NCBI GenBank assembly: GCA_002811645.1
Contig: PDIP01000005.1
Span: 259,198-323,197 of the forward strand
Source of the DNA: Corallochytrium limacisporum Hawaii
Taxonomy: Eukaryota; Protista; Pluriformea
Reading direction: 5' to 3'
DNA: 64,000 nt
Shown here: piece after piece, positions 10,582 to 42,927 of the stretch
Layout of the letters: each line of letters begins with the position of its first letter
Numbering within the stretch: position 1 is the stretch's first letter
Position numbers and translations under genes: made by a program
The notes under the pieces: model-generated
Seen by the model: the letters and a program-made list of their open reading frames with translations, nothing else
Told to the model about the DNA's origin: nothing
The model's database searches: none

Positions 10582-11131
10582 AGAATATCACTCCCCTTGC
10601 GTCAAACATAGTCTTTATTATTACATTCCTACATCTGTACATCCAGCAGTCCGGCTATTGTTGTGATTGTGGCATGCTCCGAATTCAGTCTCCATGTCCC
10701 GTGAACCAAGACCAGATTGCATAGACCGGCATGCCATTGACTAAGTCATTGGGTTCTTCGTTTATCCCCCTTCTTTTGCCCTTGCCTCCTTCCGCCGCCG
10801 CTGCTACTCTCCTCCCCTACTCCGCGCGCAGCTGCGCGGGTTTTTCCTTAGTGGAGTACGGCTACCGATGAGAGCGCCCCGGGTGCTAGGGGAAGACGGG
10901 AACACAGCTTAAGGAAGCTAAGTACTGCGAGTTTGGATGTTTGTTATGGTATTTATTAAATCTACATGGATTGTTTTCTTACATAAGACTCTGCTTGTAC
11001 TGTTTGGTTCATGAAATAGTTCGTGCGAATCAGTATTCTCGTTCAAAGCGTTCGTTGAACTCGTTTATATGGCAACAGTATTAATTGCTCCAATGGTTGG
11101 ATAGCAACAGACACATATCTCTAATACAATC

Positions 11132-11977
11132 ATGTTCCTGTTTGGAAAGAGCAAAAAGTCTGGAAAAGACAGCCTACCGAGGTCAGGCAATAAAGGAAGC
11201 CTATCAAGGTCAAGCAATAAAGGAAGCACTGGTAATGTGTCAAGGCAGGGATCTCAGAAGCATGTACGAGTGGAGAGCAACAGTGGTAACTTCCGCCGTA
11301 AACGAGCTGGCAGCGCTACAGGGACACCAAACGCTATTGAGATTAGTAATCCCATTGCATTCCGTCATATAGAGCACAAAACTATGAAGAAACAGTTTCT
11401 TCTGGCGGCACAGAAACAGCGGGATCTTGCGGAAAGGAAGAAGAACCAACAGATGAGACCAGTGGGCAGTGAGGCACAACTGGCTGGCTTTTTAGAGAAT
11501 TTTGAGGAGGCGATCGAGGGTGCTATGTCGACATCGGTAGCCGAGGACGTCTTTGACGCTGCCCTGAGTCAACCCAGCAGCCCAGCTGTGGCAATCAAGA
11601 CCGTGCGCGGAAGACGCATCCACGACACAGTGCGCAAATTGAAAACGGTGCGCCATGTTCTGTCAGACACTGAAAAGGAGAAATACTTGGATATCAGCGA
11701 AAAAGTGTTCAAAGACAAGTCAAAGGGACTTCCTCATTTCCTTTATACGTATGCAACGTGTTCACCTGGCGAAGAAGGCGGGTGGGACACTCCGGGTCAG
11801 TGGATAGGCATGTACTCCATTGAGGAGCTGCAGTCATTTGATGATTTCTTGCGCGAGTCTCACAAGCTGGAGACAATGCGTTTGGCTACCGATCAGGATC
11901 GGAAGAAAGACGCGATCCTGGCAGAGATGACCCAACTATTGCAGGAGCTTCTGGCTCAGGAGGCGACAAAGGCCTGA
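11132..11977 (+). CDS. CRIB-motif + Salvador-type SARAH-domain protein (putative Cdc42/Rac-Hippo adaptor)
   Basis: CRIB motif ISNPIAFRHIEH (aa 71-82). The C-terminal LPHFLYTYATCSP...W..YSIEELQSFDDFLRESHKLE...KKDAILAEM resembles the SAV1 SARAH domain plus its N-terminal extension (comparison from memory). Confidence 0.75.
   Translation: MFLFGKSKKSGKDSLPRSGNKGSLSRSSNKGSTGNVSRQGSQKHVRVESNSGNFRRKRAGSATGTPNAIEISNPIAFRHIEHKTMKKQFLLAAQKQRDLAERKKNQQMRPVGSEAQLAGFLENFEEAIEGAMSTSVAEDVFDAALSQPSSPAVAIKTVRGRRIHDTVRKLKTVRHVLSDTEKEKYLDISEKVFKDKSKGLPHFLYTYATCSPGEEGGWDTPGQWIGMYSIEELQSFDDFLRESHKLETMRLATDQDRKKDAILAEMTQLLQELLAQEATKA
11171..11224 (+). repeat. 27-nt in-frame tandem duplication (SLPRSGNKG / SLSRSSNKG)
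   Basis: agcctaccgaggtcaggcaataaagga followed by agcctatcaaggtcaagcaataaagga. Confidence 0.85.
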
Positions 11978-12427
11978 AGAGTTTGTATAGGATCATATTT
12001 TATGTCTACTGTACCCTGTTTCGTATGGTCTTGTGTTCGTATTTGTCTTCATCTGTCTTGTGTTTTCATTTATCGTACAGTACCTACAGTGATGATTTCC
12101 AAATCCTTCTGCAAATCAAGACTCTTGGTATCTGCCTTACTCCCCTTTGCAGACGGCTTAGTGGTACTATCTATTGTTTATGATCGGGCCCGGCCCTTCG
12201 GACCAACATGATTGGAACCAAGCGATGCCTGGCTGCCCTCGGGGCCGACTCTTTTCGTCGATCCGCCTTTGCTAGAGGCACCCTTTGCATTGGCCCCGGT
12301 TGGTCTTGTAGACATCACCTTCTCTGTAGGTGTAGCCTAAATTCTATCCTCACGGTATTTTGCTTAATCAGGAGTAAGAGTGAAGGCCTTGAGCACGTCC
12401 GCGAATGACTTGGCTCCAATATGTGCG

Positions 12428-12619
12428 ATGTTCAAATATCAGACGAAGCCGTTCACACCCGTTGCCCTTCCTGCGCCCGAAGTCGGTTGGGAGGACGACG
12501 AGGAAATGGCAGAATTGGAAGATCCTGCTACCGAAGACGAGAAAGCAGTCTTGCCTTGGGAGGAAAGTGAAGGTGAAGAAGGTGAGGATGACGATGAAGA
12601 GGATGAGGATGAGGACTAA
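12428..12619 (+). CDS. Small, highly acidic hypothetical protein (63 aa from first ATG; an upstream exon is possible)
   Basis: MFKYQTKPFTPVALPAPEVGWEDDEE...LPWEESEGEEGEDDDEEDEDED. Coding-like GAR/GAY codons, followed by an AT-rich 3' region converging on the next gene. Confidence 0.55.
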   Translation: MFKYQTKPFTPVALPAPEVGWEDDEEMAELEDPATEDEKAVLPWEESEGEEGEDDDEEDEDED

Positions 12620-12809: not shown

Positions 12810-13865
12810 TCACGCCTCCATTCCATTATCGGCTTCTGATGTGTGTGAGTGGTACTCTCCGGAGGCATGCTGCTGACAATGCTGTTCAAAGACTTTCATG
12901 TCTCCAAACATAGCTTGGCATCCTTCCCACTCACACTGGATCATAACGGATCGGACAATTGTATACTTCACTGAAGTATTCAGTGACTCATGCTGTTGCT
13001 GCTGGTTGTGGTTGTACTGCTGAGCACTTTGCTCGGAGACCGAAGTACTGGAGGTATAGGGAGTGGAACGAGCAGAATTAGCGTCGGTACTGGATGCATT
13101 GTCGGAAGATACGACATGGTTGTACTGATACTGATGCTGATGCTGCGGCTGCTGCTCCTGCTGCTCCTGCAGCTGATGATGCTGCGGCTGGTGATACTGT
13201 TGATACTGCTGCCCATGCTGCTGATACTGCTGTTCATGCTGCTGATGGTGGTAGTGATGGTACTGGTGAGGACTCTGCCCATATTCTGAATACTGCTGCT
13301 GCTGCTGTTGTTCAGTCCCATATTGTTGTTTCTGTGGGCTGCCAAAGCCAGCGCTCATTGCCAGGAGAGTACTGGCCGCGGAAGTAGCAATCAACTGAGA
13401 CGCTGTGTGCGGACCATTCTTCCGGCTCATAGCCAAAGGAACGGGCTCTGCATTATCCGTAGAGGTACATTCACCAGCATCGCTTGTGCTGGCGAGGCTA
13501 GTACGGGAGGACACACTGCTTCGGTGGCGATCTAGGACACCAGTCTTGTTATTCCTAGAATTACGACGAATACGTTTCTTTGGGCTCTTACCCCGACTGA
13601 CCCGCTCTTCAGGGCGCTTAGTTCGGAACTTGCCGTCCGGATTGCGGGCTAGGACAGGTTTAGATCCACCACTGCTACGGCGACTAGGGGGTCCGAAGCT
13701 ACTTTTCATACTATCTTCTGGTTGTGTATCGGATTCACTCACCGAACTCGAGGGAACCATGCTAGTGACAGACTTTCCCTGAAGGGCACGGTTCATGAAG
13801 AGACTACCGTTCTGTACCAGTGCCGTCATTGAGGCAATACTGGCCAATTCGCTTTCAATAAACAT
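12810..13865 (-). CDS. Q/H-rich putative transcription regulator with a single C-terminal C2H2 zinc finger
   Basis: Zinc finger CEWEGC...F......HCQQH, basic NLS-like patch KSPKKRIRRNSR, poly-Q/H tract. First ATG is at 13865 (the ORF track starts at a GTG). Confidence 0.75.
   Translation of the reverse strand: MFIESELASIASMTALVQNGSLFMNRALQGKSVTSMVPSSSVSESDTQPEDSMKSSFGPPSRRSSGGSKPVLARNPDGKFRTKRPEERVSRGKSPKKRIRRNSRNNKTGVLDRHRSSVSSRTSLASTSDAGECTSTDNAEPVPLAMSRKNGPHTASQLIATSAASTLLAMSAGFGSPQKQQYGTEQQQQQQYSEYGQSPHQYHHYHHQQHEQQYQQHGQQYQQYHQPQHHQLQEQQEQQPQHQHQYQYNHVVSSDNASSTDANSARSTPYTSSTSVSEQSAQQYNHNQQQQHESLNTSVKYTIVRSVMIQCEWEGCQAMFGDMKVFEQHCQQHASGEYHSHTSEADNGMEA
13125..13311 (-). repeat. Imperfect CAG/CAT/TAT trinucleotide repeat encoding a Q/H/Y-rich tract
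   Basis: Plus strand shows runs of tgc/tga/tgt triplets (ctgatgctgatgctgcggctgctgc...). Confidence 0.8.
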
Positions 13866-16800
13866 TGTTGCTATGTGTTTGGACACTATGTGAGTAAGTT
13901 TCTATGTGGTAAAAGGCTATCTTATTCCACGCTATGCGAACGAACTGTATCTACGCATCAAAGTCCCCAGAAGTGGTCCCGCTCTCTCTCCCGAATAGAG
14001 TGGATCAGGTCTGGTTCAGGACCCGTTTTCAAATAGACTGATATTTTGTTCTCCTACAGCCTTTGACAGGTCAGCAGTGATCTTCCATATACCAAACCGG
14101 ATCAGCCATCGCCTTGCCACCCAGAACTCGATACAGCTTAAACAGGAATGGTCATCGATGTCAATGCCGTGGATTATTGCGATGCAACCCACACCCCGAT
14201 TGTGGGGCACCCATGGAATCCTCTGCTGAGGAGGGGAACGGTGACAAGAGTTGTCTGATGAGAACCCTACTCACTTCTCGTTTCTCCACCACTTGCGAAT
14301 TGGCCGTCATACCGGTATCTTCAGAGAGTGGACGCGTTCTCGTTCTACGAAGGCTAAAACCTCTCTGTCCGCTTGGTCATATTTCTCCCTCCTTTGCCAG
14401 CACAATGCTTCAGGCAACTAGCCCTTTCCCATCCTATTCTTGCAGCGTAATGCAATCCCCAGTGCTCAATTCTCCCATGCATAGCCTCCAACCAACCGTG
14501 GAGCTGACAGAAGAGCAACCAAAATCTTTCCGATATTTTTCCTTAGTTTTTTTTTCACTTCGGCATTCCGAACGCAGCTGCTCTTGCCTGTCATTCTGAC
14601 TGCGCACGGCCATGCGACACTCCCTTCTTCCCCTGGTTCCAGTTCTGAAACTAAGTTCACCGGCGACGGTTGGGCCAGCCGTGCATGTGAACAAGACATT
14701 CAACACGCCACTCTGACTGAGCACAAAGTTCCTGAATGCCTGGCGGGGCCGGTGGTGGCGAAACCAAAGTCCACTCCTTCGTTCCCGTTCTGCTGACGGA
14801 GATTTCGCCTCCGCACTTTAGCAAATATTTGGGACCGAAAAGGGCGGGAGGGGGAGAGTGAACGGGTTGGCCTTGGAAACCCACAAATGAAGCAACCACC
14901 GCCCACCCCACTTCGACACACCACCACCTGCTGTTCTGCCGAAATCTGTCGATGAAATTCTCTGATTACTCTCCCCCCTTTTTTTTTTTGTGTGTCGCCC
15001 TGGAGAAGCCTCAGAAAATTGATCCGCTCCATTGTCATAGAAAGCTCAACAGGTGCCAACGGGGCCAGGAGTAGGAGACAAGGAAACTCAAGCGTGGGGT
15101 GTGCGCAACGACACCAGCACCGGCCGGTGCCACAGAGACACTGCGGTAAGTCCAGGACACAGGGGTGGTGACACAGGATTATATACGATCAAACACTGAT
15201 TCCACCGTTTGGACACTGTTGGTCGTTTGGAAACTTTTTACGCTCCATAATGAAAATTTCATAGTTTGTCCAGCGGTTGCTGCACTTTCATCGGTGACAA
15301 CGGTATTTCGTAATCAATTACAGTGACAAAGTATGCGCGAAACGCTTGGTCATCATCACCTGGTCATGGTCTGTTTGTTGTATCGATTCATGAAGAAACG
15401 AAACAGTGGTGCATGAGTGGAACCGCACATGTCGCCTTTAAGCAGCAGAGAATAGTTTCCTGCTAGTAGAACGAATTAGAAGGGTTGACCTTAGCTTGAA
15501 CGTGAGCAAGAGGGTTCCAGTGCTTAGATATTACAAGCAGTGTTACGTATACCGAAGCACCCCATCAACGGTGGTCTTTGGAATAAAATGACCTTGCAAA
15601 TTTGTAACAGTTCGCCTTTCCATGGGCGCTATACAATACAGCCATGGCAGTTTAGGTTGAAGTCCTAACCTGCTGTCCAATTTACTATGACCGCCCAACA
15701 AGTATGGTCGGCCTGATTTGATAGGTGGCCGCCATGGCCAACTGTCACACACAGGAACAGCATTTAAATCCCAAGGAAACTATGTGCTGATCTACATGCA
15801 TGCATGCCTTTTCGTTGGGAAGGCGGTATGGTTAGATCGCGATGGTAGTACGAACCGGTCCATGGCCCAAACCTTCTGGCAGAACATGCACAACACGTCA
15901 AAGAGGAGGAATCTCAGCATTGGACTACACACTGAGCCTGCTTGAAAGGACATAACAGAAGTATTGTGAGAGTGGTGTAACAATGGTTTCGGGCATGGTT
16001 CATTCCCCGCCATAGTCGTACACAGCCAGTGTCTATGGTAGCCTGCCATGGCGAAGAGTGGAATTGCTTTGGTCGTATGCGCTTCGCAGCTGAAGATTCC
16101 TTTGCTAGAGTTTCCTTTTGTGGCAATGCTCAATTGGCTATGGATGGCGGCGGTATGGATACTTGGGGAAGTCCAAAGAGGGTAGTGCCTCAGTTTTGTT
16201 TCCCATTTGACGACAAACACTGGAAGTCTACTTCCCAAGTGATTCGCACATTGGTTCGCTGACGGGGTGAGAGGTTGGCAATGGGGTGGGACCCAGATCG
16301 TGATTCCTTCCCTCCCTCCCTTGCTCCCCTCCCTTGTCCCTAACGTCTCTCCCGGGGCAACCCAATTTCCCTTCTAGTAGGAGGCCTTCGTTTCTGTTGC
16401 GTGCACAATGGGATCGAGAGGTGTAGTGACATCGAAACATAGGAGAGCAACTGTTTCATACACGAGACCTGAAGGCTGGTGAAGATGTTTGGGTGTGTCT
16501 TTGTATGTATGAATTGTGTGTAATTGCGCATCTTCCGTTGTTTCTAATGTTTGGGCGATGTACCGAAAGCCTGGCATGCATAAATTGCTTGAGAAGCAAC
16601 AGGAAGGATCATGCTTCCCTTATTGATGTTTGTTGGAAGAAAGCGTGAAACTTACCCTCTGTCACATGCAGATGCATCGCTTGATTGTAGGACAAAAACA
16701 CACTGGAGTGGAGAATGAGATGGTTAAAGATGTTCTGTCGCAGTGATTTAGTACGTAAGCAGCCGACTGATCCCGGAACACATTCCCATCTGAGGGCGTA

Positions 16801-18957: not shown

Positions 18958-20502
18958 TTACATCATGATCATGTGGAATGCCAGGGCGACAACCATAGCG
19001 CCCGAGGAGAGGAAGGCTGTGCTGGCGCTGCCGCCATCGCCGCCATCGCCGCCGTCGTCGCCGGTGTCATCACCAGGGGTCGTTGGGTCCGCAACATCGT
19101 CATCGTTCCCGTTGTTGTCGTCATCGTCACTAGCAGGAACCTCCCCACAGGTCACGGTCTCGATCTGACGTAACCAGACCTCTTGACCCGCAGACACTTC
19201 ACGGAGGATAGTGTTCTGCTTAGAGGTAGCTGGGAGACCCAAGCTGGTACCGGTTGGGCATGAACTGCCGGCGTTACTATGGTCAGAAGAACTGTCACTG
19301 AGTGTCCAGGACTCCGAATCAGTGTCGCTGACGCAGGCAGAAAGTAGTTCCTGACTACAGTCTCCGTTGTCCCAGCGTCCATCGGCGTTCTGCACAACAC
19401 AGCTGGCGCTGCAGCTGTTGATTGGAGACACATCCTGTACCCAGCTCCAAACGCTCCACTCACTGCGATCTGCGTCCATGTGATCAAAAGCAGTAGTGAA
19501 GCCACATTCCATGACGCTCTGCACATCATCTCGGCTTCTCATAACATCCTCTGCAGAGAAAGCGAAATTCTTGTCATCCAAGGTCAGGTCGGCCTCGAGA
19601 GCAGATTCTCGGACTACTAGACGGCCGCCAGAGTAGCCGTTGCAAGTGGTTGGATCCAGTTGGGTAAAGCCAATGTCTTGGCGGCCATTGACATTGCTGC
19701 TCAGGGTGGTGATGTCGTGGATAACACTGTTGCCAAAGTTGCAAGTCGAGGAAACAAAGACGCGGGCTCCGGAACTCAGCATCTCCCTGATGGTGGGCCA
19801 GACTTTACCAGTGCTTTCAGTGTACTGAGCCAGTTTGTTCGGAGTGTAGATCATGTCGCCGAAGACACTTTCAAAGACATTGTTAAGTTCCTCCACATTA
19901 ACGCAGCCAGTCTCCTCACTGACACGATCCTCAATGTCAATATAGATGAACTCGTCCGCATCGGCACTGCTTAGCCAGTCGGACAGGACGGTTAGCTGGC
20001 TCTTGACGGTGAACGAGGTCGAGGTGCAACCACGGTGGGCTCCGTAGTCAGGGAAGTCCAGGAGAGAACTACAAAGGTCTAGGCGCACCTCGTCCTGCGC
20101 TTGTTGGCAGAACCCATTCAGTTGATTGCTTGCATGACAAACGCGTAGCGGCCCATCGTCTGCCAATTCCGGAACGTAGTGTATATCTAGATTGATATGG
20201 CGAACTCCAAGGTTCATCTGCTCAGACATTGAGATATATTGGTTCTCAGCCACAAGGAAACCCTCAATACACTGACCGAAGAAGCAAACATCGCCATCGT
20301 CTCGGAGATCCTTGACAAAGTCCTGAAACCGGCTGGGGAAGGAGTCTAATGTTGCGTAAGAATTGTGGGTGCCAACCAAGTTCACGTCCCCGAAGTCTGC
20401 ATCCAGGCCTGCCCGGTACTGAGAAGCCAGGGCCGTTTGCGACCAGTCTGTTGCTTGTGCAGCACCCACAAGAGCTAATCCTATCCAAAACGTACTCTTC
20501 AT
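18958..20502 (-). CDS. Secreted, probably GPI-anchored PI-PLC-like phosphodiesterase with a C-terminal C-type-lectin-like (Mtc6-type) module
   Basis: Signal peptide MKSTFWIGLALVGAAQA. PLC-X motifs GTHNSY, QMNLGVRHINLDIH and VCH. Lectin-like WSW...C...DGRWDNGDC...AC...CP.G...P...N...VWL. D/G spacer and hydrophobic C-terminus. Confidence 0.8.
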   Translation of the reverse strand: MKSTFWIGLALVGAAQATDWSQTALASQYRAGLDADFGDVNLVGTHNSYATLDSFPSRFQDFVKDLRDDGDVCFFGQCIEGFLVAENQYISMSEQMNLGVRHINLDIHYVPELADDGPLRVCHASNQLNGFCQQAQDEVRLDLCSSLLDFPDYGAHRGCTSTSFTVKSQLTVLSDWLSSADADEFIYIDIEDRVSEETGCVNVEELNNVFESVFGDMIYTPNKLAQYTESTGKVWPTIREMLSSGARVFVSSTCNFGNSVIHDITTLSSNVNGRQDIGFTQLDPTTCNGYSGGRLVVRESALEADLTLDDKNFAFSAEDVMRSRDDVQSVMECGFTTAFDHMDADRSEWSVWSWVQDVSPINSCSASCVVQNADGRWDNGDCSQELLSACVSDTDSESWTLSDSSSDHSNAGSSCPTGTSLGLPATSKQNTILREVSAGQEVWLRQIETVTCGEVPASDDDDNNGNDDDVADPTTPGDDTGDDGGDGGDGGSASTAFLSSGAMVVALAFHMIMM

Positions 20503-39567: not shown

Positions 39568-42500
39568 CTACTTGAACATAAGAATACCCCTGACTTCACC
39601 CAGGAACACCTGCAATGCCGCACGGAAGTTCTCCATATTGCGACGCTTAAAGTTGAGCTCAATTTGGCCACCATTCATCATGCTATCGAAGGCCTTGGCC
39701 ACACGATCGCGATCTCCTTGGAACGTCTCGTTTACATTCTGAACCACTTCATGCGCTAGGCGCATAAAGTCATTCTGGCAGCAACACATTGTTGCAAAGA
39801 GGGCCTTCGAAGCATTCCCGATCAGGTCCATGTTGAACGGTTTGAAGAGTAGCAACTCCATGATGTTCTTAAGGAAGTGTCCAGCACTGTTGGGAATAAT
39901 TTTGTTGGCGTGGACGTTGGAGAAGTTCGCCCCATGCTTCTGCATATCGTTGAACACTCCTTCGTATAGGGTTGCGATGCTTTCGAAGGAACGACGGCAC
40001 ACTTCAATAGCACTGGGACTGTTGAGGCCCTTGTCCAGAGAGAGAACAATGGCCTGGGCCGGATCACCCTCCAGCTGGAGAATGTGCTCCACATGGACTT
40101 CAAAGAGTTGTTGCAGAAGAGTGTAGAAAGTTGCAGCAGTCTTGGACAGGTCTTCCAACTCCAAAGCTGCGTTTGCCAGCAACGGCAGGCACTGCACAAC
40201 AGCAACCATTGTGTGCAGATCCTGCGTTCCCGATACTTCGTCACTGAAGTCGACATAGTCTTTAGAGAACAACGCCAGATTCATCTGCAACATGGCACGG
40301 ATGCCATCACCGATGTCCTCCACTTCGTCTACTCGCTTGCGAGAGCGATTGCCTTTGATAAAGTCAGAGTGGAACCGGCGAACCATGTGCAATACGGCAT
40401 CAGCAAAGTGCTTTTCTTGCTCATTTGTAGCATACGGTCCCATGTGCTCCAAGAATACGGCCCAACATTCCAGAATGACACCCTGGACCTGAGCATTTGT
40501 GGTGTAGCACTCCATGATTTGCGGCATGATCATCATTGGATCCCAAACCAACTGAAGCATCTGCTTCTGGTTGTTCGAAACAATGGAATGGAAGCATCCC
40601 GTCAATCCGCTCAGCACACGTCGGAGCTCTGTCTCGACCATCACATTCTGTGCGCTCTTGCGGAAGCTATCAAAGTCAGCTGCAACTTTCTTGAGAGGTG
40701 CGACAAGACTCTCCACCAATTGAATCAGGTACTGCATTTCCTCATTGGATTCATCCGCATCCCAAGATGCGACCGAGAGCGCTGTGTACAAGGAAACAAG
40801 ATGGTCAGGACCCATGTTGGACATAGGGGACTGCCTCTGTTTCACAATGGTAACAAACTCCAGCCACTGTGGTGATAGTTGGGTCATTAGAGCAATGCGG
40901 CATGTTTTCATCTTCACCAATGCCAGCAGAAGACTGCAAGCCTCACTGCACACCCTTTTTTCTGCGCTCATGGAGGAGCAGCAAGCCTGAACAAATTGAA
41001 CCAAAAAGACCAAAATCTGCCCCGAGTGCTCGCTTTGCAAGCCAAAGGCCTGAAGAATTGCAGGATCTGCAGTTTGCTTGTTTGTGAAAAGGTATGTTCG
41101 TGCCCAGCGGTGCAAGAACCACAGCACAGTCTGCATGGCGTACGGGCTCACGGCACCATTGTCACCGTGCTGCTGTAAGATCTGCATACATCCCTGACAA
41201 AATTGGAGCACACCTTGCATCATGGTGCAGACGGCTTGGCTAGCTTCTGCACTTCCGCGCCATCCCTGTGTGAAACATTCTGGTATTTCAGGAATCTCAC
41301 CCGTGTCGCTGTCGGCAATAAGATGCCCAGCAATCAGCAGTAACCAGTGCAAATCTTCCCACAGTAGCATGTCGCCTTGCTGTCCTTGCATTAAGGCGGT
41401 CATGGTGTGCTGCAACTGCCCAATGGTATGAGTGATTGCTCCGCTGACAGTCTGCATGGAGGGTGCTATTGCGTGACGACCAATGACAGCCGTGCTTGTC
41501 AAGATGTCATCGTACACGTCCTTATCATCATCAAAATCTTCATCTTCTTCGTCATCGGCCTCTTGCTCTGCCTTTCTACGACCGTCCTGGAGAGCGGTCT
41601 TCACATATGTGTTAAAGATCTCTTGTGCCGCTTGGCCAGCAGTGTTGCTGTCAACGATGCCGTTCAACATAAGACTGGTCCAAGCCGTGAACAACTGGTC
41701 GATACTGTCACTGTTCCATGGCGAAAACTCGTCGTCACCTAGTCGGGCGTTAAGGCAATCCAGTGTGAATCCAGCTGAAAGCTGTAGGAACTCTTGAAAC
41801 AGTGAAGGATTCACAGTCGACCAAGTCTGCTGATTGAAGCTGGATGTGAGGCGGTTGATGATTACGCTGTGTGCCAGCTTCATCTCCTCCGGCGTCTTGT
41901 TGTTTTGACATTTCATGATGGCAATGAAACCTTGAAGATAAAAGCTAAGGTAATTGACGCGAGCTTCAAGAGTCGGTAGGATGGGTCCCGAAAGAGTCGC
42001 CAGCTGCTGGAGACACTGACTCAAAGAATGCGCAAGCTGTTGCCGGCTGCAGATTCGAGGGTACAAAGTAAACATGACTTGCAACGGTGGGTATCCATGG
42101 CCAACCAGCAATTCTGCCCAATGCTTTGCAGGTCGCAGAATCGGCAAGCTTTCCCCAGCATCAAAAGATTCAGTCATATGCCCGACCCTTCCGAATGGCC
42201 AGCTCAGAACATTTGATGCCACTGTTAGCATGTCCTTGAGGATGATTTCAGACGGCAGCGGAATGTCATCAGTACCGTTCTGGACTTGAGCCGTAGCGCT
42301 CTGCAAAACCTGCAGGGTTAACACAAATGTTCGCTTCAACCCATTGGTTTCAAAGTCTTGCTTGCATCGATGATGAAACTCGTACGACAACCCGATTCCT
42401 GAACTTGAACTTGATGAGCCGAATTCAGTTAAGAGCGCTTGCAACTGTGACGCGGCCACGTGCTGCTGTTGTGGTGATTCTTGCGTAAGTGACCTTTCGA

Positions 42501-42927
42501 CGTGCGCCCATAGCACAGGTTCCAAAGCCTGTTGGCGCTCAGGTTCCAGCCACGCACGCTTGAGAAGGATCGCTGTTGAGTGCACAATCTCCTTCAAAAC
42601 GAATGGGCGCAAGTCCGGCTTGCCCATGGCATAGTTCAACAGCTGGTCAAACATTGTCCCCAATGCATCAGGCGTCATGTCTACTGAAGACCACTCCCGC
42701 AAGCAAGCTTTTGGTATGGCCTTAATTGCAGTCCAGACGACATAGTCTGACTTACTGTTTTCCATCAGGAAAAAGCACAGTTGATATGGTTGCCTTTTTG
42801 ACAAAAGCTCCATGAAGACGCCCTCTGCATTTTGACGCTGTGCCCGATCGGTTCCCTTTTCAACCACTTCTGCAGCCTGTTCAAACTGTACTTGCAGTTG
42901 CGCAAATTGAGCGGAATCATTTGCCAT
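39568..42927 (-). CDS. XPO4: Exportin-4
   Basis: 1119-aa HEAT-like ORF. GLSYEFHHRCKQDFE, LRPAKHW, LWEDLHWLLLIAGHLIAD...GEIPEIP, LHRWARTYL, and C-terminal FLGEVRGILMFK. Confidence 0.92.
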   Translation of the reverse strand: MANDSAQFAQLQVQFEQAAEVVEKGTDRAQRQNAEGVFMELLSKRQPYQLCFFLMENSKSDYVVWTAIKAIPKACLREWSSVDMTPDALGTMFDQLLNYAMGKPDLRPFVLKEIVHSTAILLKRAWLEPERQQALEPVLWAHVERSLTQESPQQQHVAASQLQALLTEFGSSSSSSGIGLSYEFHHRCKQDFETNGLKRTFVLTLQVLQSATAQVQNGTDDIPLPSEIILKDMLTVASNVLSWPFGRVGHMTESFDAGESLPILRPAKHWAELLVGHGYPPLQVMFTLYPRICSRQQLAHSLSQCLQQLATLSGPILPTLEARVNYLSFYLQGFIAIMKCQNNKTPEEMKLAHSVIINRLTSSFNQQTWSTVNPSLFQEFLQLSAGFTLDCLNARLGDDEFSPWNSDSIDQLFTAWTSLMLNGIVDSNTAGQAAQEIFNTYVKTALQDGRRKAEQEADDEEDEDFDDDKDVYDDILTSTAVIGRHAIAPSMQTVSGAITHTIGQLQHTMTALMQGQQGDMLLWEDLHWLLLIAGHLIADSDTGEIPEIPECFTQGWRGSAEASQAVCTMMQGVLQFCQGCMQILQQHGDNGAVSPYAMQTVLWFLHRWARTYLFTNKQTADPAILQAFGLQSEHSGQILVFLVQFVQACCSSMSAEKRVCSEACSLLLALVKMKTCRIALMTQLSPQWLEFVTIVKQRQSPMSNMGPDHLVSLYTALSVASWDADESNEEMQYLIQLVESLVAPLKKVAADFDSFRKSAQNVMVETELRRVLSGLTGCFHSIVSNNQKQMLQLVWDPMMIMPQIMECYTTNAQVQGVILECWAVFLEHMGPYATNEQEKHFADAVLHMVRRFHSDFIKGNRSRKRVDEVEDIGDGIRAMLQMNLALFSKDYVDFSDEVSGTQDLHTMVAVVQCLPLLANAALELEDLSKTAATFYTLLQQLFEVHVEHILQLEGDPAQAIVLSLDKGLNSPSAIEVCRRSFESIATLYEGVFNDMQKHGANFSNVHANKIIPNSAGHFLKNIMELLLFKPFNMDLIGNASKALFATMCCCQNDFMRLAHEVVQNVNETFQGDRDRVAKAFDSMMNGGQIELNFKRRNMENFRAALQVFLGEVRGILMFK

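What the first reader, a model, noticed from the sequence alone, without database searches (positions are those of the whole stretch)
11132..11977. CRIB-SARAH fusion: a candidate Cdc42/Rac-gated, WW-less Salvador-like adaptor for the Hippo/MST kinase
Seen in sequence: aa 71-82 (nt 11342-11377) ISNPIAFRHIEH fits the CRIB consensus I-S-x-P-x-x-F-x-H-x-x-H. Residues ~200-266 (nt ~11729-11929) read LPHFLYTYATCSP-(GEEGGWDTPGQ)-WIGMYSIEELQSFDDFLRESHKLETMRLATDQDRKKDAILAEM. Established, recalled from memory: human SAV1 ends IPDWLQVYARAP...KWELFQLADLDTYQGMLKLLFMKELEQIVKMYEAYRQALLTEL. The Sav-specific pre-SARAH extension aligns (LPHFLYTYA vs IPDWLQVYA). The helix then aligns without gaps from Y/F through AILAEM/ALLTEL, and SIEELQSF also echoes the RASSF motif SIPELQNF. 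SARAH domains heterodimerise with Hippo/MST kinases. Animal SARAH adaptors carry WW domains (Sav) or Ras-association domains (RASSF); I know of none with a CRIB motif. Inference: this organism may wire Cdc42/Rac directly into a Hippo-type kinase module through a third class of SARAH adaptor, analogous to RASSF for Ras. That would be a previously undescribed branch of premetazoan Hippo signalling.
Basis: partly seen in the sequence, partly recalled or inferred. Interest (0 to 1): 0.9.

Follow-up and report, generated by a model that had tools for sequence, protein, structure and literature searches.

The report
Cdc42-binding Salvador-like Hippo adaptor candidate
A single-celled relative of animals (Corallochytrium) has a small orphan protein that appears to join a Cdc42/Rac-binding motif to a worn but recognisable copy of the Salvador domain that grips the Hippo growth-control kinase, which would be a previously undescribed way of wiring cell-polarity switches into Hippo signalling if binding is confirmed.

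Summary
The 281-aa ORF (11132-11977) in Corallochytrium limacisporum is intact, single-copy and has no detectable homologue. The CRIB core (aa 71-82) is far beyond chance: only it and four Pfam-confirmed CRIBs match in 210 kaa, 0/200,000 shuffles; Pfam PBD misses it and the usual I/V-G after the second His is absent. The C-terminus (aa 200-266) aligns to real Salvador extended-SARAH domains: extension motif plus a gapless 40-residue helix. Standard HMM searches do not detect this (3.6 bits, P 0.003). A full-length two-block Salvador profile gives 57 against a null maximum of 22, 0/100,000 shuffles, proteome-wide expectation about 0.002-0.8 depending on boundaries; the helix alone is not significant. 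It scores better as Salvador than as MST. The genome has a SARAH-bearing Hippo kinase, Cdc42, Rac and TEAD; no WW-Salvador or RASSF was found. WW-less Salvador is already known (hydrozoans); a CRIB-SARAH fusion, or a Salvador-type SARAH this deep in Holozoa, was not found in the literature searched. No binding, complex model or conservation evidence exists. Verdict: probable new architecture of a known adaptor kind; homology about 0.8, full Cdc42/Rac-to-Hippo mechanism about 0.5. Not found before on other DNA by this scan.

The parts
11132..11977 (+). Single-exon ORF, 281 aa, orphan; candidate CRIB + Salvador-type SARAH adaptor
   Evidence: the identical 281-aa protein is in the protein collection and is the only hit; single copy in the genome; two runs guessed to be RNA hold 63% and 44% of the words of 10600-12400
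11132..11308 (+). Disordered, basic Ser/Gly/Lys-rich N-terminus (aa 1-59) ending in a basic cluster at aa 54-59, 12 residues before the CRIB; possible membrane-binding patch
   Evidence: sequence; no structure predicted; role inferred from basic-region+CRIB effectors (own knowledge)
11342..11377 (+). CRIB core motif, aa 71-82 (I71, S72, P74, F77, H79, H82 all kept; followed by K-T instead of I/V-G)
   Evidence: not detected by Pfam PBD or PDB search
11375..11569 (+). Three low-confidence helices (aa 82-146); no family; possible self-association or spacer
   Evidence: AlphaFold single-sequence model, pLDDT under 55
11600..11653 (+). Three T-V-R repeats (aa 157-174) in the linker; possible phosphosites, untested
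   Evidence: sequence; noted earlier as s1-558484
11729..11755 (+). Salvador-type pre-SARAH extension motif, aa 200-208 (L-P-x-F-L-x-x-Y-A against I/L-P-x-W-L-x-x-Y-A/S in human, fly, worm and arthropod Salvador); predicted short helix
   Evidence: Salvador sequences; alignment; helix at aa 200-209
11756..11809 (+). Linker aa 209-226 with W224; five residues longer than in Salvador, lacks the D-H pair as such
   Evidence: spacing 16 against 11
11810..11929 (+). SARAH-like long helix, aa 227-266, gapless against Salvador, MST and RASSF registers
   Evidence: helix 230-280, pLDDT 70-90 in its second half

Best explanation
The protein is a highly diverged Salvador-type adaptor whose C-terminal extended SARAH forms an antiparallel coiled coil with the SARAH of the organism's Hippo/MST kinase, and whose N-terminal basic patch plus CRIB binds GTP-loaded Cdc42 or Rac at a membrane. 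Shown: the motifs, their statistics, and the presence of all partners in the genome. Inferred: active Cdc42/Rac recruits the adaptor-kinase pair to a polarity or division site. Because it lacks the WW domains that dimerise SAV1 into an activating heterotetramer, the free adaptor should behave like RASSF5 (break the kinase homodimer and hold back autoactivation), with activation or substrate access coming from clustering on the GTPase. So it is Salvador by descent of the SARAH and RASSF-like in logic.
For: Two-block Salvador profile (built from arthropod Salvador exons retrieved without using the query, validated on 6BN1_B and 6AO5_B at E 5e-24 and 8e-24): query 57.2, next best 22.3 of 2,194 ORFs, 0 of 100,000 shuffles; per-protein P 1e-7 to 5e-5 and proteome expectation 0.002-0.8 over 50 boundary choices. 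Helix score on the Salvador profile 35.8, against a median of 28.8 for true animal MST SARAHs and 15.0 for the genome's own; on the MST profile 14-17, within the 11-29 range of true Salvador rows. Of the seven SAV1 residues essential for MST2 binding (PMC5663475): E346=E247 identical; I350/L251, R358/K259, L361/I262, L365/M266 conservative; Y357/K258 as in worm Salvador and all MSTs; R368/L269 lost. Domain is C-terminal as in all SARAH proteins. CRIB statistics. Partners present: Hippo with SARAH, Cdc42, Rac, TEAD; no other SARAH partner found.
Against: No hit by Pfam, phmmer on 1.8 billion representatives, PDB, fold or Atlas searches. Local HMM score only 3.6 bits, rank 5 of 2,194; hhalign P 0.06. 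The helix alone is not significant at proteome scale (expectation 1-40) and a NAP1 helix scores 43 on an MST profile, showing how helices can mimic SARAH. The two-block test was designed after seeing the alignment and its tail is extrapolated from about 60,000 sites. The conserved SARAH tyrosine (SAV1 Y354) is Q255, core L342 is S243, L347 is T248. No homologue shows that CRIB and SARAH are conserved together. No binding data or complex model.
Confidence: 0.52

Rival explanations
1. It is a real Salvador-type SARAH partner of Hippo, but the CRIB is weak, vestigial or used for something else, so the adaptor is not gated by Cdc42/Rac (a WW-less Salvador like the hydrozoan ones).
For: The CRIB lacks the I/V-G and downstream hairpin seen in the genome's PAK, WASP and small CRIB proteins and is missed by Pfam PBD; WW-less Salvador exists.
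Against: All six core CRIB positions are kept, expected 0.09 times per proteome by chance; a basic cluster precedes it; the MLK-like own CRIB also lacks the glycine.
Confidence: 0.17
2. It is a Cdc42/Rac effector scaffold (Gic/CEP/SPEC-like) whose C-terminal helix is a generic coiled coil or self-dimerisation helix; the Salvador resemblance is chance.
For: All standard searches negative; fold matches are generic long helices; helix-only score not significant proteome-wide; several core SARAH residues changed.
Against: Extension motif and helix occur together in the right order and near-native spacing, C-terminally, with the same register chosen by all methods; composition-preserving and 7-residue local shuffles never reach the score.
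Confidence: 0.17
3. The SARAH is homologous but no longer binds Hippo (degenerate, or re-used for homodimers or another partner), the protein acting as a Cdc42/Rac effector only.
For: Loss of Y354, L342, L347 and R368 equivalents; the second half of the helix scores weakly.
Against: Six of seven essential interface positions are kept or match natural variants; the own kinase SARAH is itself changed at interface columns, so both partners may have drifted together; no other partner for the kinase was found.
Confidence: 0.14

Closest known systems
Salvador/SAV1 (WW-WW-extended SARAH; PDB 6AO5, 6BN1)
   Same: C-terminal SARAH-like helix preceded by the Salvador extension motif; most MST-binding positions kept; no catalytic domain
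   Different: No WW domains, no FERM-binding motif; a CRIB instead; linker five residues longer; SARAH about 22% identical, below standard detection; outside the reported range (choanoflagellates and animals, PMC7761452, PMC4761220)
Hydrozoan WW-less Salvador (Clytia, Hydra; PMC4761220)
   Same: SARAH adaptor without WW domains
   Different: Their SARAH is canonical; no CRIB is reported for them (their full sequences were not checked here)
C-RASSF proteins (RASSF1-6; RA + SARAH)
   Same: Logic: small-GTPase-binding module joined to a C-terminal SARAH, coupling a GTPase to Hippo (bioRxiv 10.1101/2020.02.05.923433)
   Different: CRIB for Rho-family Cdc42/Rac instead of an RA domain for Ras-family GTPases; carries the Salvador extension that RASSF lacks
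Non-kinase CRIB scaffolds (yeast Gic1/2, CDC42EP/Borg, CDC42SE/SPEC; own knowledge)
   Same: Basic N-terminus, CRIB, largely disordered small protein
   Different: None is known to carry a SARAH; no sequence similarity beyond the motif

Membership tests
Salvador/SAV1 | Pre-SARAH extension motif (I/L-P-x-W-L-x-x-Y-A/S) | tested here: met
   aa 200-208 keep L, P, L, Y, A with W to F; Salvador rows; on its own the motif is not significant (rank 4 in a motif-enriched null; 16 DNA matches genome-wide)
Salvador/SAV1 | C-terminal SARAH helix recognisable by a Salvador profile | tested here: inconclusive
   Local HMM 3.6 bits, P 0.003; gapless full-length score 35.8, top of null but proteome expectation 1-40; with the extension 0.002-0.8
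Salvador/SAV1 | Seven residues essential for MST2 binding (PMC5663475) | tested here: inconclusive
   1 identical, 4 conservative, 1 as in worm Salvador/MST, 1 lost (mapped by hand)
Salvador/SAV1 | Two WW domains | tested here: not met
   None in the protein and none on contig C242; also absent in accepted hydrozoan orthologues
Salvador/SAV1 | Heterodimer with the Hippo/MST SARAH | not testable with these tools
   No multimer prediction or binding assay available; partner kinase exists
Salvador/SAV1 | Orthology by phylogeny | not testable with these tools
   Orphan; 60 twilight-zone columns; only arthropod Salvador rows have references
C-RASSF | RA domain | tested here: not met
C-RASSF | Nore1-type SARAH (PF16517) | tested here: not met
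   the profile-enrichment test was weak (RASSF5 E 0.09 with the query, 0.49 with a decoy)
Hippo/MST kinase | Kinase domain and MST-type SARAH (PF11629) | tested here: not met
   No kinase; MST SARAH HMM score -0.7 bits
CRIB/PBD effectors | Core I-S-x-P-x(2,4)-F-x-H-x-x-H | tested here: met
CRIB/PBD effectors | Pfam PBD above cut-off; I/V-G and hairpin after the core | tested here: not met
CRIB/PBD effectors | GTP-dependent binding to Cdc42/Rac | not testable with these tools
   Cdc42 and Rac genes present

The most novel reading that the evidence does not exclude
A Salvador-type extended SARAH existed at the base of Holozoa, earlier than reported, and in Corallochytrium it is fused to a working CRIB, giving a direct Cdc42/Rac-to-Hippo adaptor that parallels RASSF for Ras; WW-based surveys missed it.
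Probability: 0.5. Interest if true: 0.85.

Novelty: new variant of a known kind. Interest (0 to 1): 0.72.

Why it matters
Salvador is reported only from choanoflagellates and animals and was sought through its WW domains (PMC7035326), so unicellular Hippo kinases with a SARAH have had no known partner in lineages such as this one. If real, this protein dates the Salvador-type SARAH to the holozoan root, shows that SARAH adaptors swap input modules (WW, RA, CRIB), and offers a direct physical link between Cdc42/Rac polarity signalling and Hippo, fitting the cytoskeletal role of the pathway in Capsaspora (PMC10959527). Corallochytrium is transfectable, so the idea can be tested.

Tried and rejected
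No homologues: word search, whole and C-terminal region, full phmmer on representatives, metagenome contigs, encoding contigs, Atlas features twice. PDB sequence searches with four pieces: nothing. Single-sequence AlphaFold models gave only helices; fold searches returned generic coiled coils. MST-type SARAH profile does not score the query, but it also fails to list SAV1 or RASSF5 in its top 60 PDB hits, so that miss is uninformative. Adding the query to MST profiles raised RASSF5, but a decoy did part of the same; rejected as evidence. Human, fly, worm and hydrozoan Salvador sequences seen in papers and PDB alignments have no reference id, so they were compared by eye only and left out of all computations. 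A larger own-genome null could not be fetched. The key papers of Cairns 2018 and Sebe-Pedros 2012 were not held.

Full report
Source and gene. The window is from a compact eukaryotic genome of 24.1 Mb in 286 contigs. Its Hippo kinase is identical to EukProt entry Clim_evm68s88, which identifies the organism as Corallochytrium limacisporum, a unicellular holozoan. The ORF 11132-11977 (+) gives 281 aa without stops, lies 550 bp downstream of a ribosomal protein L12 gene among unrelated housekeeping genes, is single-copy and is present as the identical 281-aa protein in the protein collection, where it is its own only hit. Two public runs guessed to be RNA hold 63% and 44% of the words of the region, which is compatible with expression but does not show it.

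CRIB. All six core positions are present at aa 71-82. The strict pattern matches five sites in 210,421 aa of own-genome ORFs: the query and the four proteins that Pfam PBD had found (PAK, WASP, a small SPEC-like protein, an MLK-like kinase); none of 200,000 shuffles matches, and about 0.09 matches are expected per proteome. Pfam PBD itself misses it because the I/V-G and following hairpin are replaced by a predicted helix. A basic cluster lies 12 residues upstream. Cdc42, Rac and RhoA genes are present. I put real Cdc42/Rac binding at about 0.75 (inference).

SARAH: the negatives. No standard search detects it: Pfam, PDB sequences, 1.8 billion representatives, Atlas, folds. An HMM from 107 MST SARAHs scores it -0.7 bits, but an MST profile also fails to list SAV1 or RASSF5 among its top 60 PDB hits, so this does not discriminate.

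SARAH: the positive test. Pfam has no Salvador SARAH hit to use, so I retrieved real Salvador exons from metagenome contigs with a short consensus DNA pattern that did not use the query (arthropod-like, none human). Scored over full length as two gapless blocks with a flexible spacer, the query reaches 57.2; the next of 2,194 own-genome ORFs, a set enriched for the extension motif, reaches 22.3; none of 100,000 shuffles (whole, C-terminal, 7-residue local) reaches it. Over 50 boundary and spacer choices the extrapolated expectation is 0.002-0.8 per proteome and 1e-7 to 5e-5 per protein of this size. The helix alone is top of the null but not significant at proteome scale (1-40). Caveats: the test was designed after seeing the alignment, the profile is narrow, the tail is extrapolated from about 60,000 sites, and a NAP1 helix scoring 43 on an MST profile shows that helices can imitate SARAH. 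Since only a handful of proteins here carry a CRIB, the per-protein figure is the more relevant one; I put homology to the Salvador extended SARAH at about 0.8.

Class and interface. The helix scores 35.8 on the Salvador profile (animal MST SARAHs median 28.8, own kinase 15.0) and 14-17 on the MST profile, within the range of true Salvador rows; with the extension this makes it Salvador-type. By eye, against sequences displayed by the tools, the first 14 helix residues share 7 identities with fly Salvador, and the extension shares 6 of 11 with worm Salvador; BLOSUM62 sums worked out by hand for the 40-residue helix are 50 (fly), 43 (worm), 30 (human), 26 (Hydra, MST2). These are hand counts, not tool results. 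Of seven SAV1 residues whose mutation abolishes MST2 binding (PMC5663475), one is identical (E247), four conservative (L251, K259, I262, M266), one matches worm Salvador and MST (K258) and one is lost (L269). The conserved tyrosine (SAV1 Y354) and two core leucines are replaced by Q255, S243 and T248. The own kinase SARAH also departs from animal MSTs at two interface columns, so joint drift is possible but untested.

Genomic context of the pathway. The genome has one SARAH-bearing Hippo kinase and TEAD. Seventeen WW matches belong to Nedd4-type ligases, SETD2, Pin1 and other non-Salvador proteins; six RA matches include no RASSF; PF16517 and the Salvador profile find nothing. These scans are exon-wise and filtered, so absence is not proven, but the query is the only SARAH partner candidate seen.

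Mechanism. Shown: motifs, statistics, partners. Inferred: the SARAH pairs with the kinase SARAH, the extension packing on the coiled coil as in 6AO5; the basic patch and CRIB dock on GTP-Cdc42/Rac at a membrane. SAV1 activates MST through WW-mediated heterotetramers, whereas an isolated SARAH partner such as RASSF5 breaks the kinase homodimer and blocks autoactivation (PMC6131212). Without WW domains the free adaptor should therefore restrain the kinase, and GTPase-driven clustering would localise or activate it, unless helices 82-146 dimerise in place of WW. Joint probability about 0.5.

Relation to what is known. WW-less Salvador is known in hydrozoans (PMC4761220), so that part is not new. 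Salvador is reported only for choanoflagellates and animals, RASSF likewise, and a survey that included Corallochytrium defined Salvador by two WW domains. SAV1, RASSF and MST are described as the only SARAH proteins of the pathway. Paper searches found no CRIB+SARAH protein, though the library lacks many subscription papers. It works like a RASSF and descends, probably, from a Salvador-type SARAH; it fails the WW test and is not filed as a Salvador orthologue. As an orphan it cannot yet be called a class.

Verdict. Observation confirmed; interpretation partly supported. New variant of a known kind, interest 0.72.

Noticed in passing
L001:1471-3087 (-), own Hippo kinase: Linker holds a long run of Thr-Met repeats; its SARAH has R-A in place of the animal E-I at interface columns, opposite positions where the candidate partner has also changed.
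   Followed up: partly
whole genome: TEAD is present but no Yorkie-like WW protein appeared among 17 WW matches, although PMC7035326 lists Yorkie for C. limacisporum; may be a miss of the scan.
   Followed up: no
window 12371-12619 (+): Short very acidic ORF downstream of the gene, with two Trp-acidic motifs; coding status unknown.
   Followed up: no
L016:463-3090 (+): HECT ligase with an unusual C1-C2-WW-fibronectin-like-CCCH arrangement before the HECT domain (read from sequence).
   Followed up: no
L005:1390-2313 (+) and L006:1453-3057 (-): A small SPEC/CDC42SE-like CRIB protein with a long acidic tail, and an SH3-kinase-coil-CRIB MLK-like kinase.
   Followed up: no
L002:409-1914 (-): NAP1/SET-family helix that scores as a weak MST SARAH (E 0.016); a false positive useful as a benchmark.
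   Followed up: yes
window 11132-11170: The hydrophobic-then-basic start resembles the starts of worm and Hydra Salvador but lacks the FERM-binding motif; too short to test.
   Followed up: no
window 39568-42927 (-), 18958-20502 (-), 12810-13886 (-): Long ORFs (1119, 514, 358 aa) without any Pfam family.
   Followed up: no
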